The notes under the pieces are model-generated. The model worked only from the letters and a program-made list of their open reading frames with translations, had not been told where the DNA came from and did not search any database. Below, one piece after another: positions 4,794 through 23,825 of a DNA stretch of 64,000 nt (within the stretch, counting starts at the first letter, position 1; every line of letters begins with the position of its first letter). The position numbers were made by a program, and so were the translations under genes. Location: positions 1 through 64,000 of the IMG/VR virus record IMGVR_UViG_3300042891_000711. One strand, given 5' to 3'.

Positions 4794-4852
4794 TGTAGAT
4801 GCCTAATTAGGGTCTACAACTACTACTTGCTTTTTATAAGGAGAAAACAATG
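4794..4852 (+). promoter_or_regulatory. ROSE-like RNA thermometer in the dnaK 5' UTR
   Basis: hairpin TGTAGATGCCT-AATT-AGGGTCTACA, then CTTGCTT-TTTAT-AAGGAG, pairing UUGCU with the SD around a bulged G. Confidence 0.7.
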
Positions 4853-6766
4853 AGCAAAAATACAATCATAGGTATTGACCTAGGCACCACTAATTCTTGT
4901 GTGGCCATTCTTGAAAATAACAAATCACGTGTAATTGAAAATAACGAAGGTGCTCGTACTACACCAAGTATCGTTGCCTACGGCGATGAAATTATTGTAG
5001 GTGCTAGTGCTAAACGTCAAGCAGTTACTAATCCAAAAAACACAATCTACGCCAGCAAACGACTTATTGGTCGTAAGTTTGATGAAGACGCTGTACAAAA
5101 AGACATTGACCTAATGCCTTACAAGATCGTTAAAAACGAAAATGGTGATGCATGGGTTGAAGTCAACGGTGACAAACTAGCACCTCCACAAATTTCAGCA
5201 GAAGTTCTGCGCAAAATGAAATTGACAGCAGAAGACTATTTAGGTTACAGTGTAACGCAGGCAGTTATCACAGTCCCTGCGTACTTTAACGACAGTCAAA
5301 GACAAGCTACTAAAGATGCTGGTAAGATTGCCGGCTTGGAAGTACTCCGTATTATTAACGAGCCTACTGCGGCCGCACTGGCATTTGGTTGCGATAAAGG
5401 TGATAAGAAAGACCGTAAGATTGCTGTGTATGACCTAGGTGGTGGTACATTTGATATCAGTATCATTGAAATCAGCGACATCGACGGCGAAAAACAATTT
5501 GAAGTATTATCTACCAATGGTGATACATTCCTAGGCGGTGAAGACTTTGACCAACGTATTATGGAATACTTGGTAGATGAGTTTAAGAAAGAGTCTGGCA
5601 TTGACTTAAAACAAGATATGCTAGCCCTACAACGTCTTAAAGAATCAGCTGAAAAAGCTAAAATTGAATTGTCAAGTTCAACACAGACAGATGTAAACTT
5701 ACCTTACATCACTGCTGATGCAACCGGTCCTAAACACTTGTCAGTTAAACTAACACGTAGTAAGTTTGAAAGTTTAGTTGAAGATTTAATTAAACGTTCG
5801 ATTGACCCATGTAAAATTGCTGTTAAAGACTCTGGTATTAACATCAGTGACATTGACGATGTTATCTTAGTCGGTGGTCAGACACGTATGCCTAAAGTAC
5901 AAGAAGCTGTTGAAGCATTCTTTGGTCGTGCACCACGTAAAGACGTTAACCCAGATGAAGCTGTGGCAGTTGGTGCGGCAATTCAAGGTGCGGTATTGGG
6001 TGGCGATAAGACTGATGTATTGTTACTAGACGTAACTCCACTATCATTGGGTATTGAAACAATGGGTGGTATTATGACCAAGCTGATTAAGAAAAATACA
6101 ACTATCCCAACCAAAGCAAGCCAAACATTCTCCACAGCAGAAGACAATCAACCAGCTGTGACTGTTATGGTAGCACAGGGTGAGCGTGAGTTTGTCAAGG
6201 ACAACAAAGTACTTGGTCAGTTCAATTTAGAAGGTATCGAACCACAACGTCGTGGCCAACCGCAGATTGAAATTACACTTGACATCGATGCTAACGGTAT
6301 TCTTAAAGTAAGTGCTAAAGATAAAGCAACTGGCAAAGAAAACAAGATTACTATCAAAGCTAACTCAGGTCTAACCGAAGAAGAAATTGATGCAATGGTA
6401 CGTGATGCAGAAGTTAATGCTGATGCAGATAAAAAATTGCGTGAATTAGTTGATGCACGTAACCAAGCTGAAGCACAGGTTCACGATGTTAAGAAAACTG
6501 TAGAAGAAGCTGGTGACGCGGTAACTGCTGAACAGCATACTGCAATCAATGATGCAATTACCGCGGTTGAAGAAGCCATCAAGGGTGATGATGTAGAAGC
6601 TATTAAATCAGCAATGGTAAAATTAGCAGAACCAGTAGCACCAATCTATCAAGCTAAACAAGCACAAGAGTCAGCAACAGTTGAGCCTGGTGCACAAACA
6701 GCTTCAGATGCGCAAGATGGTGTTGTTGATGCTGAATTTACAGAAGTTGACAAGGAGAGTAAATAA
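4850..6766 (+). CDS. dnaK: Hsp70 chaperone DnaK
   Basis: [31 protein letters not shown]-terminal VVDAEFTEV. Confidence 0.98.
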
Positions 6767-7230
6767 TGAAACAAGTTTACACAACCCTTGACATCCCTAG
6801 CATCTATAAGTTTGCTATCGGCTTCGATGAGTTATTTTCACAACTGCAACACTTAGAGCAACGCGGTAAGGATTCGGGCTACCCACCGTTTAATCTAATT
6901 AAACTAAACGAAACTAACTACGCCATTGAATTAGCAGTAGCTGGTTTTGCTGAAGATGAATTAGATGTAGAAATTGAAAACGGTGAATTAGTTATCCGCG
7001 GCACTAACCGTGAAGTCAGCTTAGAAGAAGCTCTTCATGACCTTGAACATAATCCAGTTGAGTATATCCATCGTGGTATTGCGGCTCGTGACTTTGTTAA
7101 ACGCATCAAGTTAGCCGAGGGTGTAGAAGTTAACTCAGCACACGTTAAGAACGGTATCCTAACAGTTAAATTGGAACAATTCACACCTGAACCAGTTAAA
7201 CAAAAGGTTGCAATTTCTTTCGAAAAGTAG
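6766..7230 (+). CDS. small heat shock protein Hsp20/IbpA family
   Basis: IGFD, YPPFNL, ELAVAGF, YIHRGIAARDF, NGILTV. Confidence 0.95.
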   Translation: MKQVYTTLDIPSIYKFAIGFDELFSQLQHLEQRGKDSGYPPFNLIKLNETNYAIELAVAGFAEDELDVEIENGELVIRGTNREVSLEEALHDLEHNPVEYIHRGIAARDFVKRIKLAEGVEVNSAHVKNGILTVKLEQFTPEPVKQKVAISFEK

Positions 7231-7294
7231 TAGTATAGTAATAAGGGTGGAGGAAACTCCACCCATCCTCAACAAAAATACAAAGAGAGAAGAT

Positions 7295-7600
7295 ATGGCC
7301 AAGGCAATTGCAAAAGTTAAAACAACACCAAACTTATCAGTCAAAGAACCCAGTATGTACAAGGTCATTTATATCAATGATAATGTAACAACTATGGAAT
7401 TTGTTATTGAAAGTCTGCGTGTGGTATTTGATATTGCCGTTGACACTGCAATTGAAATTACACAAACTATTCACGAAGAAGGCAGTGCAACAGTTATTGT
7501 GTTACCTTATGAAATGGCAGAACAAAAAGGTGTTGAAGCAACACAACTTGCTAGAGCAAATGGCTTTCCACTTGTAATTAAACTTGAACCTGCTGCATGA
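7295..7600 (+). CDS. clpS: N-degron adaptor ClpS
   Basis: PSMYKVIYINDNVTTMEFVI...IHEEG...AEQK...FPL; start moved to ATG 7295. Confidence 0.9.
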   Translation: MAKAIAKVKTTPNLSVKEPSMYKVIYINDNVTTMEFVIESLRVVFDIAVDTAIEITQTIHEEGSATVIVLPYEMAEQKGVEATQLARANGFPLVIKLEPAA

Positions 7601-8869: not shown

Positions 8870-9577
8870 TTACTTAGTTCTAGGTCCTAATCCGGGTATC
8901 CAACCTAAACTAATATACTCGTTAAATAACTCAGGTGATATGTATTTTCTATCACATGTTTCCTTGTTATGTACCCAGCGTTTGCCAATAAGTGATTGTT
9001 TAATCTTTTCCGCTTTTTCGTCTGAGCAAGGTGGGCGAACATTCCACCCAGGAGTTCCTGCTCGTAGTTTGCGAGTAACAGATATTTTAGATACTTCTTC
9101 ATCTGTTCGAGCAATACCTTTATTCCAACTTGATTGCCCTTGCCTTGATAATGATAACTTTTCTCTCCATTCGAGAGTAAAATCTTCTGATGTGCGTCCT
9201 GTTTTTCTACCGTAGTTAGGATTGAGCGGACCTGTTAAAGTTTTAAGATATTCTGCTCGTTGTGATTTAAGTTTTTCGTATATAGTAGATGTCATTTTGT
9301 AGTCGTGTTTGCTGTTCTTACCTTTACAGCACATACGCCAAGCCGCGTGAAACATTTTAATTTGTGCCTGGCCTGTAGTCATTTTTGGTAGTAATAAATG
9401 ACAAACAAAGTGTTCTCGTGCTGTTAGGCTTACTAAGTTATCTTTAGAATTATTGCCACCTAAACTTTTTGGTATAATATGATGGCGTTCTATATATGTT
9501 TCTGGTGATAAAGTTCTTGACTTTGCGTTAGATACTATGTTAAAATAATACTTAGAATATTTATTTTGTAAATACAT
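8870..9577 (-). mobile_element. free-standing HNH homing endonuclease with NUMOD-type C-terminal repeats
   Basis: ERHHIIPKSLGGNNSKDNLVSLTAREHFVCHLLL; NPNYG/WNKG/EKIKQS DNA-binding repeats; antisense to neighbours; start ATG 9577 with AAGGAG SD. Confidence 0.85.
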
Positions 9578-9647
9578 TTGCTGTAACTCCTTTTCAGTTA
9601 TAGAGTAGTTGGATATCCCCATATCGCGAACTACATTATTATTTATC
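9578..9647 (-). promoter_or_regulatory. late promoter plus two-hairpin structured leader of the HNH gene
   Basis: minus strand: TAAATA, GTAGTT-CGC-GATAT-GGGG-ATATC-C-AACTAC, then TAACT-GAAAAGG-AGTTA covering the SD. Confidence 0.6.
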
Positions 9648-9662
9648 TCATAAAGGAATAAA

Positions 9663-10202
9663 ATGAGTTTTTCGGTTATGCTTGATTTAGAAACACTAAG
9701 TACCCGCCCAGAAGCAACTATCTTAACATTTGGCGCTATTAAGTTTAGCCCATACAATCAAGAGCCTATGACAGATGGTATCTACTATCGTATTAATGTT
9801 GATGAACAAATTGAGTTAGGTAGCCATGTAGACGAAAACACTGTAGCATGGTGGGGCACCCAAGCAGAAGATGTGCGTGAAGAAGCACTTAGTCCTGAGA
9901 ACCGTATTAGCCTAGAAGAGTTCACACAAAACTTAAATCGTTTCCTAGTAGGTGCTGACAATATTTGGGCACAAGGTCCGGTGTTTGATATTGTTATTTT
10001 AGAAAACTTATACAGACGATTGGGCAAACCTTGTCCATGGCAGTTCTGGCAGATCCGTGATAGTCGTACTTTGTTAAGTAGTCTAGGTGACCCACGTGAA
10101 AAGAACAAAGCAGGCCTGCATAATGCATTAGAAGATGCAGTCAGTCAAGCGCAGGCAGTCCAGTACGTGTTTAAACAAGCCGGAATTACGGAGAAACGAT
10201 AG
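9663..10202 (+). CDS. DEDDh 3'-5' exonuclease (DexA/Rv2179c-like)
   Basis: MLDLETL, WAQGPVFD, RDSRT, HNALEDA. Confidence 0.9.
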   Translation: MSFSVMLDLETLSTRPEATILTFGAIKFSPYNQEPMTDGIYYRINVDEQIELGSHVDENTVAWWGTQAEDVREEALSPENRISLEEFTQNLNRFLVGADNIWAQGPVFDIVILENLYRRLGKPCPWQFWQIRDSRTLLSSLGDPREKNKAGLHNALEDAVSQAQAVQYVFKQAGITEKR

Positions 10203-10522
10203 TGGAAATTATATTTGGTAGAGAAAACGCAGAAAAACTGCGTGAAAAGTACACTGTATTAGATTTAGAAACAGTTGAGCGAGATGGTGCAAGTCTTGAA
10301 GTATTTTGCCTAATTCCTGCTGATAAAATTAGCCTAGGTGATTTGCCTACGCTAGAACAATACACTAATCTACATGCAGAATTTTTACAAGGTTATAAGA
10401 ATAAACACTACGACTACTGTCGTCAGTGCATCACTTACCTAATGGGTAAGTTCTCCGGTGAAGTTGATACATTCTATGAAGAAATACTACGTAGAATTGA
10501 TCTAGAAGACCCTCCAAAGTAA
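10202..10522 (+). CDS. stand-alone homolog of the C-terminal region of the CHASE2 adenylate cyclase
   Basis: aligns by eye with the last ~110 aa of CDS 21801-23825; GTG start. Confidence 0.6.
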   Translation: MEIIFGRENAEKLREKYTVLDLETVERDGASLEVFCLIPADKISLGDLPTLEQYTNLHAEFLQGYKNKHYDYCRQCITYLMGKFSGEVDTFYEEILRRIDLEDPPK

Positions 10523-10542: not shown

Positions 10543-10576
10543 AGAGCCCCCGTTAAATAATAATAACCGGGGCTTT
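10543..10576 (+). promoter_or_regulatory. hairpin with a late promoter in its loop, upstream of csgF
   Basis: AGAGCCCC-C-GTT...AAC-C-GGGGCTTT with TAAATA at 10554-10559. Confidence 0.55.
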
Positions 10577-10579: not shown

Positions 10580-11077
10580 ATGAACAAACGTATGGTCTGC
10601 AATCTTTTATTGGTCGTCACGTTGACTGCTAGCGTTAATATTGCCAAGGCTGGCGAAATGGTGCACACATTCAGTAGCCCGGCATTCAGCGGACAGGGCT
10701 TTGGAATACATGCCCTTACGATTAAACAATTAGAAGATCAGGCCAAGGACAAGCGTGAATCTGCGGCAGAAGCTATACAGGCCAAAGCAGAATCTGCTGC
10801 ATTGAATACTCCGCAGGCTAGATTCATTGCTAACTTAGAATCAAGAATTTATAGTCAACTAGCAAAACAGCTAACTGACAGCATGTTTGGTGAAGGTGCT
10901 ACCTGTACTACAGCAGGAGTGGTATGCGGTAATATACCAAACCTGGGCGGTAACAGTATCGAGTGGAGTCTAGGCGCAGGTAGCGATAGTGGATTAATTA
11001 TTATTACTATACAGGATCTGGCTAATGTTGATAATGTAACAACAATGAAAGTGCCAGCAGGGACCTTTTACTTCTAA
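10580..11077 (+). CDS. csgF: curli assembly protein CsgF-like
   Basis: signal peptide, mature N-terminus GEMVHTFSSPAFSG, F..NLESRIYSQLA; directly upstream of csgG. Confidence 0.75.
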   Translation: MNKRMVCNLLLVVTLTASVNIAKAGEMVHTFSSPAFSGQGFGIHALTIKQLEDQAKDKRESAAEAIQAKAESAALNTPQARFIANLESRIYSQLAKQLTDSMFGEGATCTTAGVVCGNIPNLGGNSIEWSLGAGSDSGLIIITIQDLANVDNVTTMKVPAGTFYF

Positions 11078-11943
11078 TGAAAAAGTTATTAATTCTTTTA
11101 TTAGCAGTAACATTAGGCGGATGTGCCACGGGTAGTGTGATTCGTGAAAAAGTCACAGGTGAACAATTTGATAAACCTGAAGTAGTACGTGAAACATACT
11201 TTACTAAACCGGAGAATAGAGTATTGCCTCCAGCAGGCGGTCCTGTTCCTATAGCAGTGTATAGTTTCTTAGATAAAACAGGACAACGTAAGAATATACC
11301 TAACGTGGCTAGTTTTAGTACAGCAGTATCGCAGGGTGCAGAAGCATACTTAATCGGCGCCTTACAAGATGTAGGCGACCAACGTTGGTTTACTGTGTTA
11401 GAACGTGTAGGGTTAGACAACTTGATTAAAGAACGTCAGATGATTCGTCAGATGCGTGAACAATATCAAGGTAGAGAAGCCAAGTCATTACCACCAATGA
11501 TGTTTGCTGGTGTTATTGTTGAGGGAAGTGTAACAGGCTACGATAGTAACCTGCTTACAGGTGGTAGTGGTATGCGTATTTTGGGTATAGGAGCTCAAAC
11601 ACAATACCAAAGTGACACGGTTACAGTTACTCTAAGAACAGTAAGCGTTAATACAGGTGAAGTATTAACAACTGTAACAGTTACTAAAACAGTATTAAGC
11701 TACATGGATAAATTTGGTATATTAAAGTTTGTTGAAGAAGGCACAAAAGCCATTGAAGCTGAATCTGGTATGAGTATTAACGAAAGTGTCAATAAGGCAA
11801 CTAATCTAGCAGTCAAAGCAGCTGTGGTTGCTACTATTCGAGAAGGAGTTCGAAAAGGGCATTGGGCATTTAAGGAAGAGCCTAAGCCTGTAGTACAAAC
11901 AGATGGTATAACATATCCGCTGTTAGAAACAAAAAAACAATAA
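11077..11943 (+). CDS. csgG: curli secretion pore lipoprotein CsgG
   Basis: lipobox LGGC, AVYSFLDKTGQRK, FSTAVSQG, WFTVLERVGLDNLIKERQMIR. Confidence 0.93.
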   Translation: MKKLLILLLAVTLGGCATGSVIREKVTGEQFDKPEVVRETYFTKPENRVLPPAGGPVPIAVYSFLDKTGQRKNIPNVASFSTAVSQGAEAYLIGALQDVGDQRWFTVLERVGLDNLIKERQMIRQMREQYQGREAKSLPPMMFAGVIVEGSVTGYDSNLLTGGSGMRILGIGAQTQYQSDTVTVTLRTVSVNTGEVLTTVTVTKTVLSYMDKFGILKFVEEGTKAIEAESGMSINESVNKATNLAVKAAVVATIREGVRKGHWAFKEEPKPVVQTDGITYPLLETKKQ

Positions 11944-11967
11944 TAGGATTTTAAAAATCCAAGGAGC

Positions 11968-12759
11968 ATGACAATGAAATATAATTTAAAAGCAACGGTA
12001 AGTATGATGTTTTTAGCTTTGTCAACGTCGGTAATAGCCGCAGGTCCAACAGGCCCTAACCGTGTTTACATTGAACAATTGGGTAACACCAATAATGTTA
12101 CAATTGAACAGGTTGGCGGAACTAACGATGTTGGTGGTACTGCTGGTAGTGTAGCAGTTGACGCAACAGGTCTAAGTACACTAACAGTAACAGCACCAAG
12201 TACTAGTAACTATGCTACAATCAACGGTAGCAATAATGGTGTTACTATAACGCAAACTGGTGATGATAACCAAGCGCAGTATAATATTAAAGGTGGTACT
12301 AACACCTATACAAGTACTGTAACTGGTAGCGGCAATCAAAATAAACTTACTATTGGTAACACCAACACTAACGGTATGCGTAATACTGTTACTGAGTCAG
12401 TTACAGGTAGTACTAATATGTTGATTACTAATATTGTTGGCAGTGATAATGCGTTATCAACTACTATTGGCGGCGATAATAACCAATTAACCATTGGTGT
12501 AACTACTAGCAATGCCGATATTACTAACACTATTAGTGGTAGCAACAATATATTTAATATACAACAAATTGATGCTGCAGGCAGTGCTGGTCATAGTTTA
12601 ATTACATCAACTACAGGTGACTACAACAGTATTACCACACAGCAACAAGGTACAAATGATACTACATTGAACATTAGTACAACTGGTGATCATAATACGA
12701 TTACAGTACGTTCAAGCAGCGGTGCTATAGTAAGCCCAGTATCAGCAATAGTGAGATAG
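11968..12759 (+). CDS. secreted curlin-like beta-solenoid repeat protein
   Basis: signal peptide; repeated N-x-x-x-I-x-Q-x-G-x-x-N units. Confidence 0.75.
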   Translation: MTMKYNLKATVSMMFLALSTSVIAAGPTGPNRVYIEQLGNTNNVTIEQVGGTNDVGGTAGSVAVDATGLSTLTVTAPSTSNYATINGSNNGVTITQTGDDNQAQYNIKGGTNTYTSTVTGSGNQNKLTIGNTNTNGMRNTVTESVTGSTNMLITNIVGSDNALSTTIGGDNNQLTIGVTTSNADITNTISGSNNIFNIQQIDAAGSAGHSLITSTTGDYNSITTQQQGTNDTTLNISTTGDHNTITVRSSSGAIVSPVSAIVR

Positions 12760-12762
12760 TCA

Positions 12763-13854
12763 ATGAAACTATTGCTTGCCGTGGTATGCTTATTAGCATA
12801 TACCAACAGTTGGGCGGGCATTGGAACTGTAAGCGATACTAAAGGTACCGCTTGTTCAATAGAGCGTGCTAAACAGACCCTGCCTGGCAACAAAGGTGCC
12901 TCCATAGAAAGTATGGATACCTATGTTACAGGCGGCTGTGTTAGCAACATTACATTTAAAGATGACACCAAAGTAAAAATAACAGAAAACAGTCGACTAA
13001 TGATAGACGACTTTGTCTTCGATCCTAAAAAATCTGACGCAGGCAAACTAGCACTTAAAGTAGGCATGGGCACAGTGCGCTATGCCAGCGGTCAAATTGC
13101 TAAGAATAATCCACAACGAGTAGACATTAAAACTCCCACAGCCAGTATTGCTGTTCGTGGTACAGACTTTAACATGACTGTAGACGAAGCCGGTCAGAGT
13201 TTGGTAATTCTTGTGCCTAGTTGTAAAGACGGTGAAAAGATCAAAGAATATGAACTAGAAGAAAACTTATGTAAAGTGGGTAAGATTGAAGTTAGTACAC
13301 TGGCTGGTATAGTTACGTTAGATAAAGCATTTGAAGGTACCTATGTTACATCGGCTAACATGATGCCTAGTCCTCCAGCTATTATTAACACAATTGAAAG
13401 TAAGATTGGTAACAGTCTTATTATCACCCGCCCACCTGAAATTGTCAAGGCTAGTAAAGAAGCAGGTAAAAGCAAACGTGATCTAGAACAAGAAGAATTA
13501 GAAGCTATCCAAGCAAGTCAACTTGCTCAACGTATAGCCAAAGAAGGCGAAGCTAAAGCTACGGTAATGCCTTACAGTTTTGACAGTGGTAAATCAGGAT
13601 GTAATCCATCAATTAACGTCTGCGTCAAGTGGGAAAATCCTGATGGCGACAGTCTACAGGCCAAAGGTCGAGGAATAGCGTTTCGTCAAAGTGAAGATCA
13701 CTATGCGGAAGTTAAAACACAGGGCTACGAAAGTAATACGTCGATTGAAATAACACATGATGATAATATTGCTTCAGCTACAATTGGCTCAGGCGATCCA
13801 GGTGGTAATGTAGTACGTATCAAACAGAATTCTGGAGTGTTAAGACGACAATGA
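12763..13854 (+). CDS. FecR-domain periplasmic protein
   Basis: signal peptide; ITFKDDTKVKITENS, G.VRYASG, IKTPTASIAVRGTDF. Confidence 0.9.
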   Translation: MKLLLAVVCLLAYTNSWAGIGTVSDTKGTACSIERAKQTLPGNKGASIESMDTYVTGGCVSNITFKDDTKVKITENSRLMIDDFVFDPKKSDAGKLALKVGMGTVRYASGQIAKNNPQRVDIKTPTASIAVRGTDFNMTVDEAGQSLVILVPSCKDGEKIKEYELEENLCKVGKIEVSTLAGIVTLDKAFEGTYVTSANMMPSPPAIINTIESKIGNSLIITRPPEIVKASKEAGKSKRDLEQEELEAIQASQLAQRIAKEGEAKATVMPYSFDSGKSGCNPSINVCVKWENPDGDSLQAKGRGIAFRQSEDHYAEVKTQGYESNTSIEITHDDNIASATIGSGDPGGNVVRIKQNSGVLRRQ

Positions 13855-14987
13855 AACGACTCCTTTTAATCTTATTGTTAGTTTGTTCCGATACCCGGGC
13901 AGCAGGAATTACGGGTCTTAATTATCAAAATTATGCCGCAGGCGGTGCGCAACCCTCGTATACTCAAGATGCCAACGGTAACATCACCAATCGCACACTA
14001 TTAAGTACTGGAACTGTAAACACAGTAGGATTAACCACTAGTAGTGGGGCAGGCTTGCCTACTCGCAGTGATGGCTTTATTGTTCGTTTCTATGGTTACA
14101 TTAATATCGCAACAGCAGGCACCTACTACTTTGGCGGACAAGCCGACGACGGTATACGTATTAAAGTTGATGGTGTTTCTGTAGTCGACAGTTGGATTGA
14201 AAGTGGCGGAGCATTTAGACAAAGTAGTTCTATTACATTAGCCGCAGGTGTTGTTGCTGTGGAAGTGATGTTTTACGAGAACGGTGGCGGACAAATGGTT
14301 AACTTTCAGTGGTACACTCCGGGAGCAACAGCATGGGCTATGGTACCCACAGCGTCAACAGCCACCGATAATACCTATTGGGCGCCTGCAGCTCCTGCAC
14401 TATGCTGTGGGGGTAGTTCGTCAAGTTTTAATGCTAGTCCATCTAATGTAACAAAAGTACAGTCATACGCCACAAGGAATACCAATGACAGTCAAGTCTA
14501 CATAGACCAAATTGGTAATGACAATGAGATTACAGTTGATCAAACGGGTACTAAAAATAACTACACAGAATACAATGGTGGTGGTAGTTTCAATACCGTT
14601 AATATCTCACAAACTGGTAATAGTTCAACAACAGCAAACTATGTAGAACTAAATGTCAACGGTGATAGTAATACAGTAAATCTAACACAGCAGAGTACAG
14701 GCGGTGCTAAAGGTATCTACGCTACAGTTAACGATGACAATAATAATGTCACAGTCTTACAAAAAGACAGTGGTAATGCTTACTTAAACTTAAACTTGAG
14801 TGGTGGTAATAAGACAGTGGACATAACTCAACAGGGCAGTGCTAATCACATGGCCGACATTACATTAAGCGGTGCTGGTGCTAGAAGTTTAAACTTAAAT
14901 CAGCAAGGTGCAGTACAACAATTTTATAGTATCAATAGTAGTTGTGCTAGTAGTTGTCAAGCTATAACAGTAATACAGGGGCAATAA
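13851..14987 (+). CDS. secreted PA14 domain plus curlin-like repeat protein
   Basis: FYGYINIATAGTYYF...ADDGIRIKVDG...FYENGGG (PA14), then YIDQIGNDN-type repeats. Confidence 0.8.
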   Translation: MKRLLLILLLVCSDTRAAGITGLNYQNYAAGGAQPSYTQDANGNITNRTLLSTGTVNTVGLTTSSGAGLPTRSDGFIVRFYGYINIATAGTYYFGGQADDGIRIKVDGVSVVDSWIESGGAFRQSSSITLAAGVVAVEVMFYENGGGQMVNFQWYTPGATAWAMVPTASTATDNTYWAPAAPALCCGGSSSSFNASPSNVTKVQSYATRNTNDSQVYIDQIGNDNEITVDQTGTKNNYTEYNGGGSFNTVNISQTGNSSTTANYVELNVNGDSNTVNLTQQSTGGAKGIYATVNDDNNNVTVLQKDSGNAYLNLNLSGGNKTVDITQQGSANHMADITLSGAGARSLNLNQQGAVQQFYSINSSCASSCQAITVIQGQ

Positions 14988-15056
14988 CAGCACTTAACTT
15001 AGCAATTATTAAGTTTAAATATTAAAAACGACATTAAGATCGTAAGGAGCAAGTCT

Positions 15057-17105
15057 ATGAAGAAAATAACATTAGCATTGATGCTAGCGGGTGTATTTGG
15101 TTTGAATCAAGCAATGGCCGCAAATGCAATCATCGAAAATGAATACGTAAGAGCAGGTGTAAACGAAAGTACAGGTACACTAGGATCTGGTGGTGGCACA
15201 CGTCCGGGTCTACAGTATGACAATACAGGTACAAGTACTTGGCCCGGCAACAGTAGCCAAGGCGACTATCTAACACCGGGTAGCCCATTTGAAGGTTACA
15301 CAGTTAGATTAGAAGAAGCTGATGGTACACTAATCCGTTCATATACAAATAACAATACCGGTGGTGCACAAATTTCCGGCGGTGCTTGGGTAACTACTCC
15401 AACTGCTGACAGTGCTGTATGGGCTGCAACTACCAGTGACTTTGGTATTCAAAATACCTACAGCTTACCGGCTGGTCAAAAGTATATTGAAATTGACACA
15501 CAGATTACAGCAAGTATAGCTATACCTAAACTATGGTTTGGCCGCTTTATTGATCCTGATGCTATGCCTATGCCAGGTGATACGAGTGCTACAGACAATG
15601 CACGTGGCTACGGTGCAATTCCAACTACAAACGTAGTGTTTAGCGAAGCAACAGTAAGCCGTTACGCATTAGGTTTATACTCATCAGCAACTAACGTGGG
15701 TACAGGTATTAGCCCTATGTGGACAACTAATCCTAAGGACTACTACACAAACGTTGGCGGATACAATGTAGGTAACGGAGATCATACAATTGGTTTAGGT
15801 TTCTTAATGAGTGGCGTAAGTGCAGGTGACATTGTACACTTTAACTATGCTTATATCTTTGGACCAAGCGCATTTGGTGCGGCTACTTCGGCAGTTAGTG
15901 GTGGCGCTGGTGGTGGTACTCCTGGCACTGTTCCTGGAGGCGGCACGCTAGTTGACGTAGGTTCAGCAACAGATGCAGCGTCGGGTACACCAACACCTCC
16001 TCCTGCTCCAACAGTAACAGGCACAAGCACATCAACTATTACTATTAGCGATGTTACTGCGATAAGTGCAACATTACCAGTTATTACAGCGAGCCTAGCA
16101 CACCATGATGCTACAGAAGCCGCAGGTGTACAAACAATTGCACGTGAAACAACTACTAACGTAACAACTCCAATGGAACGTACATTAGTAACTAAAGTAC
16201 GTACAACCAGCACATGGAGTGATAGTACAACCACATTCGTTGATGCGGCTCCTGTGACTGATGTTACAGTATCGAACAGCGTAGCAACTTCAGTAGCTAA
16301 TGCTAGCTTCGGTGGTCGTGTTGATCAATACACACAATTAGCAGAACTAAACACAGGTATCAATCGTGGCTTAAACTCACAACTATTCCGTAAAGATATG
16401 GTTGATGGAAAGGGTTACAGAATGTACATGGGTGTTGCACATTTAGACAGCGGCGCAGGTAACGGCTATGATGCTAAGTCAGATAAATTTAACATTGGCG
16501 TTGAAAAAGATGTTAAAGCCTACTGGACGTTAGGTGCTCAATATACCAATGTTAATACATCATTAACAGGTGTTGACAGTGCCACTAAACAAAACAAAAA
16601 TCACTTGGGTGCTTATAGTATCTTAACTAAAAATAATTGGATCTTAAAAACAGATTTGGGTCTAGCTGATAACAGTCTTAAATCAAATCGCAACGTAGCG
16701 GGTTTATTCTACAATGCCAGCAGTACTGATGGAAACGATTGGTGGTTAAGTAACCGTGTTTATACTCCTAGCTTAAACGGCTTCCGCCCATACGCAGGTT
16801 ATACATATGGTAAAGATAAACGTGATGCTTACACTGAAACAGGTAGTATACAAAGTGCTAGAACTGTGGCCAGTGTAACTGACACCAATGACTACAGCGA
16901 AATTGGTGTGCGCTATGATAAGACCATTAATAAACTAATATTGTCGGGCGAAGCAGGTGTTTCTAGTGATAGCTACAAAGATATTAAAGGTGAAGTAAGT
17001 TATCTAGTTAATGCACGTAGCAGAATTAGCATAACAGCAAGTAGACAGGAACATAAGGACTTGTCAACTAACCAAATTGGTTTGCAAGGTAAGATAGATT
17101 TTTAA
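15057..17105 (+). CDS. outer-membrane autotransporter-like protein
   Basis: signal peptide, passenger-like domain, Pro/Thr linker, amphipathic beta-strand C-terminus ending in Phe (GKIDF). Confidence 0.7.
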   Translation: MKKITLALMLAGVFGLNQAMAANAIIENEYVRAGVNESTGTLGSGGGTRPGLQYDNTGTSTWPGNSSQGDYLTPGSPFEGYTVRLEEADGTLIRSYTNNNTGGAQISGGAWVTTPTADSAVWAATTSDFGIQNTYSLPAGQKYIEIDTQITASIAIPKLWFGRFIDPDAMPMPGDTSATDNARGYGAIPTTNVVFSEATVSRYALGLYSSATNVGTGISPMWTTNPKDYYTNVGGYNVGNGDHTIGLGFLMSGVSAGDIVHFNYAYIFGPSAFGAATSAVSGGAGGGTPGTVPGGGTLVDVGSATDAASGTPTPPPAPTVTGTSTSTITISDVTAISATLPVITASLAHHDATEAAGVQTIARETTTNVTTPMERTLVTKVRTTSTWSDSTTTFVDAAPVTDVTVSNSVATSVANASFGGRVDQYTQLAELNTGINRGLNSQLFRKDMVDGKGYRMYMGVAHLDSGAGNGYDAKSDKFNIGVEKDVKAYWTLGAQYTNVNTSLTGVDSATKQNKNHLGAYSILTKNNWILKTDLGLADNSLKSNRNVAGLFYNASSTDGNDWWLSNRVYTPSLNGFRPYAGYTYGKDKRDAYTETGSIQSARTVASVTDTNDYSEIGVRYDKTINKLILSGEAGVSSDSYKDIKGEVSYLVNARSRISITASRQEHKDLSTNQIGLQGKIDF

Positions 17106-17131
17106 TAAATTGCCCCGAAAGGGGCTTTTTA
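17100..17131 (+). repeat. 32-bp direct repeat copy 1 (contains stop codon and terminator)
   Basis: TTTTAATAAATTGCCCCGAAAGGGGCTTTTTA, identical to 19488-19519. Confidence 0.95.
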
Positions 17132-17149
17132 ATAACTATAAATACTATT

Positions 17150-17248
17150 ATGTATACATGGCGCGAACGTATTATTTTCTTTGAAATTGTCCTTTTCTTC
17201 ACCCTTGTGTTTTCTATCCCCTACATAGAACAACTAATCCAACTGTAA
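17150..17248 (+). CDS. 32-aa hydrophobic peptide (not in ORF track)
   Basis: MYTWRERIIFFEIVLFFTLVFSIPYIEQLIQL; starts 5 nt after TATAAATA. Confidence 0.45.
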   Translation: MYTWRERIIFFEIVLFFTLVFSIPYIEQLIQL

Positions 17249-17282
17249 CAAAAATTTAATCTGTTTGTAACGCTACTGTAAT
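17243..17282 (+). promoter_or_regulatory. Pho-box array (PhoB-type direct repeats)
   Basis: CTGTAAC/ATTTAAT/TTGTAAC/CTGTAAT at 17243, 17254, 17265, 17276, an exact 11-bp period, upstream of phosphate-related genes. Confidence 0.75.
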
Positions 17283-17304
17283 CTTTGTGTGTTTAAATAT
17301 AATT

Positions 17305-18054
17305 ATGACCACAAGATATAAGACCATTTGTATATCCGACTTCCATCTTGGCACTAAAGATGCCAAGGCCGATCTATTAAACAATTTCCTTAAACATCAC
17401 ACCTGCGAAAATTTATTTCTTGTAGGTGACATAATCGACGGCTGGAAAATACAGCAGAACAAATGGCGTTGGCATCAAAGCCATACTAATGTAATACGTA
17501 GGATATTAGGCTATAGTAAACGAGGATGCAATGTAACCTATATAACTGGCAACCATGACGAATTCCTTCGTCCGTTAGTTAGTCATGGTTTTAATCTAGG
17601 TAATATTCGTATGGCCAATCAGGCAGAATACCGTAGTATCGATGGGGAACTATTTCTTATCACACACGGCGACTTGTTTGATGGTGTTACTAGACTAGCA
17701 CCGTGGTTAGGATTTTTAGGTGACAAGATGTATGATGTTGCTTTGTGGTTTAATAACTACTTTAACTTTGCCCGTAGAAAATTAGGGTTTGGTTATTGGA
17801 GTCTGAGTAAGTTTTTAAAAGCTCGTGTTAAAAAAGCAATGGGGTTTGTGTTTAAGTTTGAGCTTACTATGTTACAGTACGCACAAAAACGTGGATACGA
17901 TGGTGTTATCTGCGGACACATACACACACCCGAAATTAAACACATCAACGGCATGATTTATATGAATGACGGCGATTGGGTTGAAAGTTGTAGTGCCCTG
18001 GTAGAAGATTATGAAGGACGCTGGGATATTATATATTGGAATGAAATCAAATAG
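17305..18054 (+). CDS. metallophosphoesterase, PlcP/LpxH2-like (phosphate-starvation phospholipase C family)
   Basis: ISDFHLG, GDIIDGW, GNHDEFLR, HGD, CGHIH, NDGDWVES. Confidence 0.8.
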   Translation: MTTRYKTICISDFHLGTKDAKADLLNNFLKHHTCENLFLVGDIIDGWKIQQNKWRWHQSHTNVIRRILGYSKRGCNVTYITGNHDEFLRPLVSHGFNLGNIRMANQAEYRSIDGELFLITHGDLFDGVTRLAPWLGFLGDKMYDVALWFNNYFNFARRKLGFGYWSLSKFLKARVKKAMGFVFKFELTMLQYAQKRGYDGVICGHIHTPEIKHINGMIYMNDGDWVESCSALVEDYEGRWDIIYWNEIK

Positions 18055-18065
18055 GAGAAAGATGA

Positions 18066-19493
18066 ATGACGATACAACAGGTTAAATCAATAATGTATTA
18101 TGTAGTAATAGCATTTGCGCTATCAATGGCAGGGTTAAAGCAAGCGCATGCCGACAGCACCACTGACATTGTTAACGCACTAGTTATGAAAGGTGTACTT
18201 ACAGAAGAAGAAGGCGCATTATTAAATAAAGGACACAGTGGAGAAACAGGCGCTGCTAAAAAAGAAAAAGACACTACTGTTCATGCGGCTAGTAAAATGA
18301 GCATTCGTGGCTATTTACAAATGCGTAACACTACTATGCTCAGTGGTGATGAAGGAGTTAACCTTTGGTCAGATCGATCTGTAGGTGATAAAAACTCTCT
18401 TGCTGATCAAGACAAAAATTTCTTAATTCGTCGAGCACGTGTGATTATTTCTGGTTCTGCCGGTGACCGTTTAGATTACTACATTCAACCTGACTTTGCT
18501 AGTACAGCAGGTACTACAGGTAACGTAGCGCAATTACGCGATGCTTATGGTGATGTCAACTTGACCAAAGACAAAGTCCACCGCGTTCGTGTTGGACAAA
18601 GTAAAGTACCATATGGCTTTGAAAACTTACAGTCTTCACAAAATCGTCTAGCACTTGATCGTGCTGACGCATTTAATAGTGCGGTACGTGATGAACGTGA
18701 CTTGGGTGCGTTTTACTACTACACACCGGATAATGTGCAAAAACTCTTTAAAGAAATTCAAGATGGCGGACTAAAACACTCAGGCAACTACGGTATGTTT
18801 GGTTTAGGTATATATAACGGCCAAGGTGCTAACCAACAAGATCGTAACGACAACTACCATGTAGTGGCACGTGCTACTTACCCATGGAAAACTGAAAGCG
18901 GTCAAATTTACGAAGCTGGTGTACAGGGTTATACAGGCAAGTATGTAAGAACAGGCAGTGCTTATAGAAAAAATATGGGCAACAATGTCTACGCAACTAA
19001 AACACCAACATTAGAACCAGGCAATACAACTGGATTTAAAGATGAGCGTGTGGGTGTGAGTTTTATGATGTACCCTATGCCTTTCGGTTTGCAAGGTGAG
19101 TGGAACTGGGGTAAAACTCCTGGCTTAGATACTGCTGCTAGTACTGACGGCATTATTAAAGAAACTAATTTAAACGGTGGCTACATTCAAACTATGTATA
19201 AAATTGATAACTTCAAGGTGTTAGATACCAATGGTACATTAATTCCATTTGTTAGATGGCAATACTTTGATGGTGCGTCAAAAGCAGAAACTAACTCACC
19301 AATGAACAAAGTTAACGATTGGGAGTTGGGTGCTGAATGGCAAATTGCTCCAGAAGTTGAACTTGTGGCTTACTATCATATGATGAACCGTAGCAATTTA
19401 GTAACAGGCGCATCAGCTACTACACTAGTAAAACAAGACTATGCTAACTTTAAAGCAGATGCTTTACGGGTTCAGCTACAGTATAACTTTTAA
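18066..19493 (+). CDS. phosphate-selective porin OprO/OprP family
   Basis: signal peptide, LVMKGVLTEEE N-terminus, IRRAR, LRDAY, GQSKVPYGFENLQSS, C-terminal Phe. Confidence 0.85.
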   Translation: MTIQQVKSIMYYVVIAFALSMAGLKQAHADSTTDIVNALVMKGVLTEEEGALLNKGHSGETGAAKKEKDTTVHAASKMSIRGYLQMRNTTMLSGDEGVNLWSDRSVGDKNSLADQDKNFLIRRARVIISGSAGDRLDYYIQPDFASTAGTTGNVAQLRDAYGDVNLTKDKVHRVRVGQSKVPYGFENLQSSQNRLALDRADAFNSAVRDERDLGAFYYYTPDNVQKLFKEIQDGGLKHSGNYGMFGLGIYNGQGANQQDRNDNYHVVARATYPWKTESGQIYEAGVQGYTGKYVRTGSAYRKNMGNNVYATKTPTLEPGNTTGFKDERVGVSFMMYPMPFGLQGEWNWGKTPGLDTAASTDGIIKETNLNGGYIQTMYKIDNFKVLDTNGTLIPFVRWQYFDGASKAETNSPMNKVNDWELGAEWQIAPEVELVAYYHMMNRSNLVTGASATTLVKQDYANFKADALRVQLQYNF

Positions 19494-19519
19494 TAAATTG
19501 CCCCGAAAGGGGCTTTTTA
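19488..19519 (+). repeat. 32-bp direct repeat copy 2 (contains stop codon and terminator)
   Basis: identical to 17100-17131. Confidence 0.95.
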
Positions 19520-19567
19520 TTGGATTAAATAGTAGACAACGGACAAATAAGAGTATAAAATAACTGT

Positions 19568-20359: not shown

Positions 20360-20427
20360 TGATAGGATCATTAATATCAGTAATGGTAATTGGTATAATA
20401 GTAATGATTGTAGCAATATTTCACTAA
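20359..20427 (+). CDS. 22-aa hydrophobic peptide (not in ORF track)
   Basis: MIGSLISVMVIGIIVMIVAIFH; coupled by TAATG overlap. Confidence 0.35.
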   Translation: MIGSLISVMVIGIIVMIVAIFH

Positions 20428-20561
20428 AATACGAGAAATTTAGCTGTCTTTAATGATTTTACGTATGTTTTTTCACCGTTTTAGGTGCTACTATATGTAT
20501 AAGTACTAGTAACAACAAAACATGTTGTGGTACTTTTTAATAATTTACTAGGAGAAATACT

Positions 20562-20633
20562 ATGTGGACTAAACCAGCAGCTACTGAAATGCGTTTCGGT
20601 TTTGAAGTAACTATGTATGTAATGAACAAGTAA
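20562..20633 (+). CDS. pqqA: PQQ precursor peptide PqqA (not in ORF track)
   Basis: MWTKPAATEMRFGFEVTMYVMNK with E-x-x-x-Y core; AGGAG SD; own terminator. Confidence 0.95.
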   Translation: MWTKPAATEMRFGFEVTMYVMNK

Positions 20634-20655
20634 TTTATTGTTCCGTACTGCAATA

Positions 20656-21800: not shown

Positions 21801-23825
21801 ATGATGAAAAATAAACTTAAAAAACTCCTAGTCAGTCCGTGGACTGCATTAATTACATTAGCTGTTATTGTGGTAGTAATCCTACAAGGACCTACGTTTG
21901 TAGAGTCAGTTAGACTTAGATACTTTGACACCCTCATTGGCGGCAAGGCTCCTACAGAAAATAATATCTATACTGTAAACATAGATGAAGCTACATTAGA
22001 CAAGTATGGACAATGGCCATTCAAACGTGACAAGTATGCCAACCTAATTGATGACCTGTACAAACATGGCGCCGGCCTAGTTGTTTGGACTGTTATGATG
22101 CCAGAAGCAGATCGTCAAGGTGGCGATGCGGCCTTAGCATTAGAGTTAGAAGATCATCCAGTTATCTTAACTAACATGCCAAGTCAAACAACTAAAAACA
22201 TTCCACGTAAACCAGGCAGTGCTGTTATTGGTGATGAATACAGCGACACAATTATCACCTATCCAGGTATTATTGCTAACATTCCGGAACTAGAACGTAA
22301 TGCCGCAGGTGTTGGTATTGCTAATACGTTTCCAGAAGTGGATGGTGTTAATCGTCGACTACCATTGTTTGTTGGTTATGACAATAACGTATATCCAAGT
22401 ATTCCATTAGAAGTATTACGTGTTATATCACAGGACTCAACTTTCCAAGTTAAGTTAAATGAATTTGGTGTAGAGAAAATGCGCATACCAAGTTTCCGTC
22501 CTATTAGCACAGACAGTTTGGGTCGTATCTGGGTAGACTGGAGTCAAAAGTCGACACAGGTATCAGCAGTTAATTTACCTAAAGACTTTGGTGGTGCTGT
22601 GGTTATTGTAGGCCTAAGTGCCGCAGGTTTAGCTAATCCTGTGCCAACTAGTATCGGTAGTGTATGGCCACAAGACATGCAGGCCGCTGTTATTGGCACA
22701 CTTGCTAACAACGTAAACATTGAACGTCCATTCTGGGCAGACAACGCCGAACTGTTAGCTCTTATTGTTATCTCACTTATTATTTTAATCTTAAGCCGTT
22801 GGGTATATGTTGGCTTAGGAGTTGGTGTTGTATTGCTTGCGGCAATTACACCTGTAACAATGTATGCGTTTGCACACTATAACTTCTTGTTTGATGCTAT
22901 TGTGCCCACAGCAGGTGGTGTACTGGTTATGCTACACGCTTATGGTGTTAAATTCATCAGCGAGTTCTTACAGAAACAACAGATCAAGAAACAATTTGGT
23001 AGTTATGTCAACCCTACTATTGTTGAACGTTTACAAAAGAATCCAGAGCTGATTAAACTAGGCGGCGAACGTAAAGAACTTTCAATTGTTATGACTGACC
23101 TACGTGGCTTTACTACATTAGGTGAATCGTTTGGTGATGATGTAGAAGGACTTACACAGATCATGAACGACTACATGACCGCATTGAGTATTCCTGTGCT
23201 TAAGAATGATGGTACTTTAATTAAGTTTATTGGTGATGCTAGTTTACACGTACATGGTGCTCCATTAGACGATGTTGACCACGCTAAGACTGCGGTTAAG
23301 ACAGCACTTGAAATGATCAAAGCCATTGAAGACTTTAACGTAGAACTTACAGCTAGTGGTCGACCGCCGGTTGGTATGGGTGCAGGTGTTAACACAGGTG
23401 AAACCTTAATTGGTAATATTGGTGCTAAGAGCAAGTTTGGCTATGATGTCTTAGGTGACAGTGTAAGTACTGCGGCACGGTTAGAAGGACAGACTAAATC
23501 ATATGGTGTATTACTAATCATTGGTCCTAAGACTGCTGAATACTGTAAAGATGCGTTCCCTGTAGTATGGTTAGACAACATTGCTGTTAAAGGCAAAACA
23601 ATTGGTCTAGACATTTACACAGTTGGCCGTACTAATCTTTATATGCATGAAGAATATCGTAAAGAATATACTCGAGGTTCATGGAGTAAGGCTATTGTAT
23701 GGGCTAAAAAGTTAGTTAACAATGATGATGTTGACATTAAACATTACTATGAACTAATGATTGAACGCATGGAACAGGGTGTTCCTGCAAACTGGGACGG
23801 AACATATCATGCTACAAGTAAATAA
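21801..23825 (+). CDS. CHASE2-domain class III adenylate cyclase
   Basis: VNIDEATLDKYGQWPF and DGVNRRLPL (CHASE2); three TMs; TDLRGFT, KFIGDA, YDVLGDSVSTAARLEG. Confidence 0.93.
   Translation: MMKNKLKKLLVSPWTALITLAVIVVVILQGPTFVESVRLRYFDTLIGGKAPTENNIYTVNIDEATLDKYGQWPFKRDKYANLIDDLYKHGAGLVVWTVMMPEADRQGGDAALALELEDHPVILTNMPSQTTKNIPRKPGSAVIGDEYSDTIITYPGIIANIPELERNAAGVGIANTFPEVDGVNRRLPLFVGYDNNVYPSIPLEVLRVISQDSTFQVKLNEFGVEKMRIPSFRPISTDSLGRIWVDWSQKSTQVSAVNLPKDFGGAVVIVGLSAAGLANPVPTSIGSVWPQDMQAAVIGTLANNVNIERPFWADNAELLALIVISLIILILSRWVYVGLGVGVVLLAAITPVTMYAFAHYNFLFDAIVPTAGGVLVMLHAYGVKFISEFLQKQQIKKQFGSYVNPTIVERLQKNPELIKLGGERKELSIVMTDLRGFTTLGESFGDDVEGLTQIMNDYMTALSIPVLKNDGTLIKFIGDASLHVHGAPLDDVDHAKTAVKTALEMIKAIEDFNVELTASGRPPVGMGAGVNTGETLIGNIGAKSKFGYDVLGDSVSTAARLEGQTKSYGVLLIIGPKTAEYCKDAFPVVWLDNIAVKGKTIGLDIYTVGRTNLYMHEEYRKEYTRGSWSKAIVWAKKLVNNDDVDIKHYYELMIERMEQGVPANWDGTYHATSK

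What the first reader, a model, noticed from the sequence alone, without database searches (positions are those of the whole stretch)
10202..10522. Stand-alone non-catalytic paralog of the cyclase C-terminus
Seen: IIFGRENAEKLREKYTVLDLETVERDGASLEVFCL aligns with LIIGPKTAEYCKDAFPVVWLDNIAVKGKTIGLDIYTV. LHAEFLQGYKNKHYDYCRQCITYLMGKFSGEVDTFYEEILRRI aligns with MHEEYRKEYTRGSWSKAIVWAKKLVNNDDVDIKHYYELMIERM at the end of CDS 21801-23825. It lacks the metal-binding Asp residues and the VKGK lysine. Inference: a regulator or decoy of the phage (or host) cyclase. Its position ties the cyclase to the csg/fecR operon.
Basis: partly seen in the sequence, partly recalled or inferred. Interest (0 to 1): 0.65.

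Follow-up and report, generated by a model that had tools for sequence, protein, structure and literature searches.

The report
Free-standing cyclase tail module in phage
A small, well-conserved phage gene encodes a stand-alone, enzymatically dead copy of the last ~100 residues of CHASE2-type adenylate cyclases; the kinship is real, but the gene occurs in phages that lack any cyclase, so its role as a cyclase regulator is unproven.

Summary
The ORF at 10202-10522 (+), 106 aa, is a real gene under purifying selection (dN/dS 0.04-0.09). It is homologous over its whole length to the C-terminal ~100 residues of the window's CHASE2 cyclase (residues ~572-672). Pairwise BLASTP is marginal (E 0.08), but deep profile comparison gives 98.8% probability (E 7e-17). 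The AlphaFold model (pLDDT 93.8) matches predicted viral CHASE2-cyclase structures at TM 0.80.

The protein carries only the last beta-alpha-beta-beta unit of the cyclase domain plus a helical tail. It has no metal-binding Asp and no VKGK lysine, so it cannot be catalytic.

Three results are new:
- The same module ends chromosomal CHASE2 cyclases of many bacteria.
- The stand-alone form is a large family (289 clusters at 50% identity) found only on viral contigs here.
- The stand-alone family is not nested among the phage cyclases in the tree.

The gene belongs to a conserved block (ClpS, cytidylyltransferase, exonuclease), not to the curli cassette. Three near-complete relatives have it without any cyclase, and Melnitz has the cyclase without it. 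The co-folding job gave no verdict. My best guess is a non-catalytic mimic of the cyclase tail; the mechanism is inferred, not shown.

The parts
10202..10522 (+). Gene for the 106-aa stand-alone cyclase-tail module. Predicted fold: strand 2-5, helix 7-13, beta hairpin 17-27/30-39, then four helices 45-102.
   Evidence: ORF and translation. 387 close homologues and 289 clusters at 50% identity. dN/dS 0.04-0.09. AF2 pLDDT 93.8. Homology to cyclase C-termini. His58 is invariant; L20, L22, L80, G82, D89, F91, Y92 and R98 are >=90% conserved.
23514..23816 (+). The homologous stretch inside the CHASE2 cyclase gene (21801-23825): residues ~572-672. It comprises the last beta-alpha-beta-beta of the cyclase domain, including VKGK, plus the helical tail.
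   Evidence: Pfam places CHASE2 at 21-329 and Guanylate_cyc at 425-599. hhalign maps the small profile to positions 158-268 of the 415-674 alignment. His616, Tyr623, Tyr649/650 and Arg656 are conserved in the tails and align with His58, Tyr65, Phe91/Tyr92 and Arg98.
9663..10202 (+). Upstream Rv2179c-like DEDDh 3'-5' exonuclease gene. Its stop overlaps the small gene's start.
   Evidence: Pfam PF16473 at 7.5e-37 and phrog_255. It lies upstream of the small gene in 79 of 79 related loci, abutting or overlapping in about two thirds of them. A member only 31% identical still follows ClpS and the exonuclease.
10543..10576 (+). Stable RNA hairpin between the small gene and csgF. It may mark a transcription-unit boundary, but its U-tract is weak.
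   Evidence: Fold energy -16.5 kcal/mol, z -3.3, with 1 of 200 shuffles folding as well. The simple terminator scan did not call it.

Best explanation
SHOWN. The ORF is a functional gene. It encodes an autonomously folding copy of the C-terminal module of CHASE2-type class III nucleotide cyclases. That module is the last beta-alpha-beta-beta unit of the catalytic domain packed against a four-helix tail that no Pfam model describes. The protein lacks every catalytic determinant, so it cannot make a cyclic nucleotide. The module itself is old and widespread: it ends chromosomal CHASE2 cyclases of Alphaproteobacteria, SAR86 and others, as well as phage cyclases. In this search the free-standing form occurred only on viral contigs, in freshwater and marine jumbo myophages related to the pelagimyophage/Melnitz group. 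There it closes a conserved block (Hsp20, ClpS, cytidylyltransferase, DEDDh exonuclease), just before a variable island. In this window that island holds the curli-FecR-cyclase cassette.

INFERRED. The family keeps the residues it shares with cyclase tails (an invariant His, Tyr, Phe/Tyr-Tyr and Arg), and it exists with or without a phage cyclase. From this I infer that it acts as a non-catalytic mimic of the tail module. It would occupy whatever the tail normally engages, either a surface of the cyclase itself or an unknown cytoplasmic partner. That would retune CHASE2-cyclase signalling of the host, and of the phage's own enzyme where one is present.

Origin: it probably arose by partial duplication or capture of a cyclase 3' end, because its N-terminal half is an intrinsic piece of the cyclase fold. 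The split predates the radiation of the phage cyclases sampled here.
For: Homology:
- hhalign probability 98.8%, E 7e-17.
- With window-type tails only, probability 91% and score 38.2, against a best score of 19.6 in 200 column shuffles.
- HMM hits to cyclase C-termini: 44-62 bits in phages, up to 81 bits in bacterial chromosomes.
- The two halves score independently.
- A single-sequence tblastn of one family member, P0289, finds the Melnitz cyclase end at E 3e-3 in a 2.3-Gb database.

Fold: AF2 pLDDT 93.8. TM 0.80 to a predicted viral CHASE2-cyclase model. Local Foldseek hits of the first ~40 residues to solved bacterial adenylyl cyclases 5o5l, 5o5k and 4p2m, rmsd 2.4-2.7 A, but with weak E-values of about 1. 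Language-model feature searches link tail and small family in both directions.

Non-catalytic: no Pfam cyclase hit in any of the 144 aligned members at the E<=1 reporting threshold, and the VKGK lysines are replaced.

Real gene: dN/dS 0.04-0.09. 289 clusters at 50% identity, the 150 listed being 52-144 aa long. Contigs from two freshwater RNA libraries lie on it.

Independent of the phage cyclase.

Bacterial cyclases with the same architecture: CHASE2 + Guanylate_cyc + tail.
Against: No experiment or prediction shows binding to any cyclase. The co-folding job returned no verdict, which is neither support nor refutation.

The host of this phage is unknown, so it is not known whether the host has a CHASE2 cyclase.

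The shared His/Tyr/Arg residues could be structural rather than a binding site. I could not inspect model coordinates.

The gene's constant companions are an exonuclease and proteostasis genes, not signalling genes. That fits a new, cyclase-unrelated job equally well.

The tree cannot be rooted, so the direction from cyclase to small protein rests on fold logic only.
Confidence: 0.4

Rival explanations
1. Neofunctionalised domain. The module was co-opted for a job unrelated to cyclic-nucleotide signalling. It might be an accessory or regulatory subunit of the adjacent DEDDh exonuclease, or an adaptor acting with the neighbouring ClpS/Hsp20/DnaK genes. Only the fold is kept.
For: An exonuclease homologue lies upstream in 79 of 79 loci, with stop/start overlap or abutment in about two thirds. 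A member only 31% identical still follows ClpS and the exonuclease with a 4-nt overlap. The gene is present in complete genomes without any cyclase. The helical half resembles generic TPR-like interaction modules (Z 7-8, not specific).
Against: All these loci come from related phages, so shared gene order may be inheritance rather than function. About one third of loci have 78-2340 nt, including other genes, between the exonuclease and the small gene. One divergent member, P0289, follows a PTH2-domain gene instead. Overlapping starts and stops are common throughout this genome. No interaction test was run.
Confidence: 0.3
2. One reading: a dedicated regulator or decoy of the phage's own CHASE2 cyclase, functionally part of the curli-FecR-cyclase cassette.
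For: Both genes lie within 12 kb on the same strand in this window. The cassette, where present, always starts just downstream of the small gene. The two proteins are homologous, and duplicates of self-associating domains often keep binding each other (general knowledge).
Against: Three genomes that are 92-100% complete have the small gene and no cyclase domain. Complete Melnitz has the tailed cyclase without the small gene. The window-type cyclase tails are the ones least similar to the small family, at 15-20 bits against 44-81 bits elsewhere. A stable hairpin separates the gene from csgF.
Confidence: 0.1
3. The similarity is chance, or the ORF is a decaying fragment of a former cyclase gene with no function of its own.
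For: Pairwise BLASTP within the window is only E 0.083. The residue 1-42 profile scores just 1.3 bits on the window's own cyclase.
Against: Profile-profile E 7e-17. HMM hits up to 81 bits. TM 0.80 to the cyclase model. dN/dS 0.04-0.09. Hundreds of diverged intact homologues of constant length.
Confidence: 0.02

Closest known systems
Class III adenylyl/guanylyl cyclase catalytic domain (Pfam PF00211)
   Same: Residues ~2-39 of the ORF correspond in sequence profile and predicted structure to the final beta-alpha-beta-beta of this domain. That is the unit which carries the phosphate-binding lysine hairpin in the enzymes.
   Different: About 145 of the ~180 domain residues are missing, including both metal-binding Asp positions. 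The hairpin lysines are replaced. No Pfam hit appears at the E<=1 reporting threshold. It is a fragment homologue, not a member.
CHASE2 receptor cyclases: phage enzymes (Melnitz gp104, phrog_35576) and bacterial ones (family of S. meliloti CyaD1/CyaD2/CyaK, PMC13001267)
   Same: The whole ORF matches the C-terminal ~110 residues of these proteins. These residues form a module not described in Pfam, with conserved His, Tyr, Tyr-Tyr and Arg.
   Different: The ORF has no CHASE2 sensor, no membrane segments and no catalytic core. P0001 also lacks the invariant terminal W-x-G...A-T-S-K motif of the cyclases. Longer family members keep the Trp. I did not test whether the S. meliloti enzymes themselves carry the tail.
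MicroProteins / dominant-negative domain fragments, such as Id proteins and plant LITTLE ZIPPER (from general knowledge, not tested here)
   Same: A short protein derived from one domain of a larger signalling protein and lacking the effector part. This is how the mimic reading would work.
   Different: Those act by titrating dimerisation domains of transcription factors, and their binding is demonstrated. Here no binding is shown.
Curli-pore cassette of pelagimyophages and Melnitz (PMC9004378)
   Same: The window carries the same csgF-csgG-curlin-FecR...cyclase cassette immediately downstream.
   Different: The small gene is not part of that cassette. It is absent from Melnitz and HTVC008M and present in relatives without the cassette.

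Membership tests
Class III nucleotide cyclase catalytic domain (PF00211) | Whole-domain profile match above the Pfam gathering score (21.9 bits) | tested here: not met
   No PF00211 hit for P0001, nor for any of the 144 aligned family members, at the E<=1 reporting threshold.
Class III nucleotide cyclase catalytic domain (PF00211) | Two metal-binding aspartates and the phosphate-binding lysine of the C-terminal hairpin | tested here: not met
   The ORF aligns only to cyclase residues 572 onward, after both Asp positions (invariant D19 and D65 of alignment A3). Asp28 and Ala30 stand at the two Lys positions of VKGK, and the position is variable across the family.
Class III nucleotide cyclase catalytic domain (PF00211) | Homology of the retained segment to the domain's last beta-alpha-beta-beta | tested here: met
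   A profile of residues 1-42 scores up to 27.3 bits on cyclase ends, against 1.0 for the best decoy. In Thalassospira the match overlaps the PF00211 match: 656-773 against 503-686. Local Foldseek matches to 5o5l and 4p2m have rmsd ~2.5 A but weak E-values.
C-terminal module of CHASE2 cyclases (no database name) | Full-length profile and fold match to the module, with the conserved His, Tyr, aromatic-Tyr and Arg | tested here: met
   hhalign probability 98.8%, E 7e-17. TM 0.80. His58, Tyr65, Phe91-Tyr92 and Arg98 align with His616, Tyr623, Tyr649-650 and Arg656.
C-terminal module of CHASE2 cyclases (no database name) | Covalent attachment to a cyclase core and the terminal W-x-G...A-T-S-K motif | tested here: not met
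   The protein is stand-alone, 106 aa, with its own start codon. P0001 ends before the motif, which is invariant in the cyclases.
Regulator or decoy of a cyclase (functional class) | Physical interaction with, or effect on, a cyclase | tested here: inconclusive
   The co-folding job gave no verdict. Co-occurrence with the phage cyclase is not obligate in either direction. A biochemical test is not possible with these tools.

The most novel reading that the evidence does not exclude
Phages of this clade encode a 'micro-cyclase-tail'. This free copy of the C-terminal module of host CHASE2 receptor cyclases would bind the host enzyme or the tail's partner and switch host cAMP/cGMP signalling early in infection. 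That would be a new kind of phage anti-signalling protein made from a fragment of the target enzyme. It would also define a regulatory module of CHASE2 cyclases that has not been recognised so far.
Probability: 0.2. Interest if true: 0.75.

Novelty: new variant of a known kind. Interest (0 to 1): 0.55.

Why it matters
CHASE2 receptor cyclases are widespread, but the ~110-residue module that ends many of them has no Pfam model. The Melnitz paper and the S. meliloti CHASE2-cyclase paper I searched by keyword do not discuss it. A phage family that keeps only this module, under strong purifying selection and in hundreds of variants, argues that the module has a function of its own. It also gives a small, soluble, well-predicted protein with which to find that function. 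If the protein acts on cyclases, it would be a compact natural tool for manipulating bacterial cAMP signalling and a new type of phage host-takeover factor. If it does not, it is a clean example of a catalytic-domain fragment exapted as an independent protein.

Tried and rejected
**Searches that found nothing useful**
- Pfam and PHROGs on P0001 and on 144 family members: only noise.
- Sequence search of PDB with both alignments: nothing meaningful.
- tblastn of P0001, P0300 and P0310 against 50,697 GenBank phages: no stand-alone homologue in any cultured phage.
- The search for related loci with the diverse alignment A2 failed because it had no conserved word. I repeated it with A1.

**Structure**
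- The first AF2 model, from the shallow alignment, had pLDDT 74.8. Its fold searches gave only generic helical matches. I replaced it with the model from the deep alignment.
- PDB-wide structural search with the good model: the helical half gives only generic TPR-like matches, Z<8. No Foldseek hit reached E<=0.001.

**Co-folding**
- Cyclase 415-674 with the small protein: no verdict (score 0.00). This is not evidence either way.

**Ideas considered and dropped**
- A zinc site formed by C36/H58/C73/C76. C76 is confined to the close clade, and C36 and C73 are replaced by Ala, Val or Ile in many members. There is therefore no family-wide metal site, although one in the close clade is not excluded.
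- Campbell-type integration of the cassette by recombination between the small gene and the cyclase tail, which would explain the order small gene, cassette, tail. Dropped because the small family, cassette-less phages included, forms one clade separate from all tails. The position is also a general variable island.
- A recent in-genome duplication of this window's cyclase. Rejected by the tree and by the low score of window-type tails.
- Strict translational coupling to the exonuclease. Weakened because about one third of loci have insertions between the two genes.

**Housekeeping**
- No alternative genetic code was used.
- Read laying was given 4,001 letters.

Full report
**1. What is at the coordinates**

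The window belongs to a 218.9-kb IMG/VR viral contig estimated at 62% complete. Near-identical DNA occurs in at least 20 lake-water metagenome runs from different studies.

The ORF at 10202-10522 (+) starts with GTG, and its start overlaps the TAG stop of the upstream gene by one base. It ends with TAA and encodes 106 residues.

Several results show it is a real gene:
- A word-indexed search found 387 homologues, the best 120 at 68-93% identity and 103-120 aa long.
- An exhaustive profile search of 1.84 billion cluster representatives found 289 clusters at E<=1e-3. The best 150 are all 52-144 aa, most of them 95-130.
- Against five close relatives (six related loci), dN/dS is 0.04-0.09 with dS 0.7-1.6.
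- Contigs from two freshwater RNA libraries lie on the gene. This is weak evidence of expression, because DNA can contaminate such libraries.

**2. Is it related to the cyclase C-terminus?**

The cyclase (21801-23825, 674 aa) has CHASE2 at residues 21-329 and Guanylate_cyc at 425-599. A further ~75 residues have no Pfam match.

The evidence strengthens as the profiles deepen:

| Comparison | Result |
|---|---|
| 120 close homologues against window-type cyclase tails | hhalign probability 13.8%, P 0.002 |
| 147 representatives at <=50% identity against the same tails | probability 91%, E 1.1e-6, score 38.2 (best of 200 column shuffles 19.6; reversed tail 12.3) |
| Same profile against a diverse cyclase alignment (A3) | probability 98.8%, E 7e-17, 111 columns |

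The last alignment runs from ORF residue 4 to the end, and covers cyclase residues 572 to about 672.

An HMM of the small family searched against the whole Melnitz genome finds exactly one place. That place is the last ~106 codons of Melnitz's cyclase gene (E 2.8e-12). The same HMM scores 44-62 bits on many other phage cyclases. Even a single family member finds the Melnitz cyclase end by tblastn in a 2.3-Gb phage database, at E 3e-3.

Each half of the protein is significant on its own:
- Residues 1-42 reach 27.3 bits on the segment that Pfam assigns to the end of the cyclase domain. The best reversed decoy scores 1.0.
- The helical half reaches 63.9 bits, against 7.2 for the best decoy.

The window's own cyclase has one of the most diverged tails, at 15-20 bits for the whole HMM. 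This explains why the in-window comparison looked weak.

**3. Structure**

With the deep alignment AlphaFold2 gives pLDDT 93.8 and pTM 0.82. The model has a strand, a short helix and a beta hairpin (residues 2-39) packed on four helices (45-102).

A shape search of the ESM Atlas returns first the family's own clusters (TM 0.87-0.90). It then returns viral proteins carrying Guanylate_cyc, including a 685-aa CHASE2+Guanylate_cyc cluster. That match has TM 0.80 by the query, 99 residues aligned and rmsd 2.2 A.

Foldseek against PDB gives no significant global hit. It does give local matches of the first ~40 residues to solved bacterial adenylyl cyclases (5o5l, 5o5k, 4p2m; rmsd 2.4-2.7 A; E about 1). 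The helical half matches only generic TPR-like helices. Language-model feature searches link the two families in both directions.

**4. Catalytic competence**

The protein begins after both metal-binding Asp positions. Asp28 and Ala30 occupy the positions of the two lysines in VKGK, and this position varies across the family. No member reaches any Pfam cyclase score. It cannot be an enzyme of this class.

**5. The module is not phage-specific**

A scan of one genome per prokaryotic species found hundreds of cyclases whose match runs to the very end of the query. The small-family HMM hits their C-termini:

| Organism | Score (bits) |
|---|---|
| Curvivirga | 81 |
| A Pelagibacteraceae MAG | 61 |
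| SAR86 single-cell genomes | 48-52 |
| Marivibrio halodurans | 48 |
| Thalassospira | 40 |

Several of the genes lie on megabase-scale chromosomal contigs. Their architecture is CHASE2 + Guanylate_cyc + tail.

No stand-alone copy was found in the two genuine bacterial genomes checked. The one stand-alone hit in a 'bacterial' MAG lies 5 kb from a phage-type cyclase on a 50-kb contig, which is probably a mis-binned phage.

HTVC008M's cyclase (611 aa) lacks the tail.

**6. Evolution**

In trees of tails plus small proteins, the small family is one clade (SH-aLRT 98-100). It is separated by a long branch from all cyclase tails. The phage cyclases form their own group (support 90) that excludes it.

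So the gene is not a recent duplicate of this phage's cyclase. The tree cannot be rooted. I infer the direction from cyclase to fragment because the N-terminal half is an integral piece of the cyclase fold.

**7. Genomic context**

I examined 80 related viral loci. In every one of the 79 where the small ORF could be called, a homologue of the Rv2179c-like exonuclease lies upstream (79 of 79). The cytidylyltransferase is usually there too.

The wider conserved block holds DnaK (in some), Hsp20, ClpS, the cytidylyltransferase and the exonuclease. A member only 31% identical still follows ClpS and the exonuclease with a 4-nt overlap. Another divergent member, P0289, follows a PTH2-domain gene next to Hsp20, ClpS and RF-1-domain genes.

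Downstream of the small gene lies a variable island. The csgF/G cassette follows in 47 of 79 loci and is absent in 18 loci that have at least 3 kb of downstream sequence. In those loci the next conserved genes correspond to window genes at 24967 and 31175-37025. In this window the island runs from about 10.5 to 25 kb. It carries these genes:
- csgF, csgG, a curlin-repeat protein and FecR;
- a PA14/curlin protein;
- an unknown 682-aa protein;
- a metallophosphatase and an O/P porin;
- a truncated UDP-glucose dehydrogenase;
- AhpC, the cyclase and a radical-SAM protein.

A stable hairpin separates the small gene from csgF.

**8. Co-occurrence with the cyclase**

Of 19 whole records that carry the small gene, 10 carry the cyclase. 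Among the four that are at least 90% complete, only one does. The other three (321-354 kb; 92, 98 and 100% complete) have no PF00211 domain at all. Conversely, the complete Melnitz genome has the tailed cyclase and no stand-alone gene.

The cyclase's tie to csg/fecR genes is shown by the contiguous cassette in Melnitz and HTVC008M (PMC9004378). It is not shown by the small gene's position.

**9. Mechanism**

Nothing here demonstrates a function. The co-folding job with the cyclase's cytoplasmic part gave no verdict and is not used as evidence.

I commit to the reading that the protein is a non-catalytic mimic of the cyclase tail module. It would compete for whatever that module engages, and so modulate CHASE2-cyclase signalling of the host, and of the phage's own enzyme where present. 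I put this at about 0.4. Three observations point that way:
- The family preserves the residues it shares with tails: an invariant His58, and Tyr65, Phe91-Tyr92 and Arg98.
- The module exists in bacterial cyclases that could be targets.
- The gene persists without a phage cyclase.

The main rival, at about 0.3, is that the domain was co-opted for an unrelated job with the exonuclease or proteostasis genes beside it. Chance similarity or a dead remnant is excluded for practical purposes.

**10. Novelty**

The family has no Pfam or functional PHROG assignment and no member in cultured phages. Some atlas clusters of similar size carry automatic names such as 'cyclase domain-containing protein (fragment)'. 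The resemblance has therefore been brushed by automatic annotation but, as far as my literature searches show, has not been analysed.

I rate it a new variant of a known kind: a free-standing fragment family of a known enzyme superfamily. As a by-product it delineates an unnamed conserved C-terminal module of CHASE2 cyclases.

Noticed in passing
window 8870-9757 (-): An HNH/NUMOD3 homing-endonuclease gene sits between the cytidylyltransferase and exonuclease genes, and its ORF overlaps the exonuclease start. It is present in only some relatives. One RNA-library contig joins 8673 to 9651 and skips it, as expected for a mobile insertion.
   Followed up: partly
window 4850-7600 (+): The phage encodes a full-length DnaK/Hsp70 (638 aa, PF00012 at 5e-254), an Hsp20 and a ClpS adaptor in a row. 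Relatives add RF-1-domain, PTH2 and ribosomal S21 genes nearby. This looks like a proteostasis and translation-rescue block.
   Followed up: partly
window 10580-23825 (+): The curli-FecR-cyclase cassette known from Melnitz and HTVC008M is expanded here. The extra genes are a PA14/curlin-repeat protein, an unknown 682-aa protein, a metallophosphatase, a phosphate-selective O/P porin, a truncated UDP-glucose dehydrogenase and an AhpC peroxiredoxin. RNA-library contigs cover csgG and the curlin gene in all four freshwater metatranscriptomes examined.
   Followed up: partly
window 23790-23822 (cyclase residues ~664-674): All phage cyclases aligned end with an invariant W-x-G...A-T-S-K motif beyond the region shared with P0001. 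Longer members of the small family keep the Trp. Its role is unknown.
   Followed up: no
L004 / G001 (329-kb complete relative with terminal repeats): In this relative the small protein is 92% identical to the window's copy, while the flanking exonuclease (69%), cytidylyltransferase (75%) and CsgF (35%) are far less similar. In most other relatives the small protein is the less conserved one. This could reflect local gene exchange or lineage-specific constraint; dS is 1.6.
   Followed up: partly
G022:C6 (Legionellales MAG), G021:C4 (SAR116 single-cell genome), G020:C1 (Luteolibacter MAG): Contigs filed under bacterial genomes carry phage-type cyclases at 55-65% identity. In the Legionellales MAG one also carries the stand-alone small gene 5 kb away. 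These are probably phage contigs; the single-cell case could hint at a host.
   Followed up: partly
window 19568-20359 and 32300-33544 (+): There are two UDP-glucose/GDP-mannose dehydrogenase homologues. The first (263 aa) lacks the C-terminal domain and lies inside the variable island. The second (414 aa) is full length and lies in a conserved block.
   Followed up: no
L084 (HTVC008M gp019): HTVC008M's CHASE2 cyclase is 611 aa and lacks the tail module found in Melnitz and most relatives. It is a natural tail-less variant that would be useful for testing what the tail does.
   Followed up: partly
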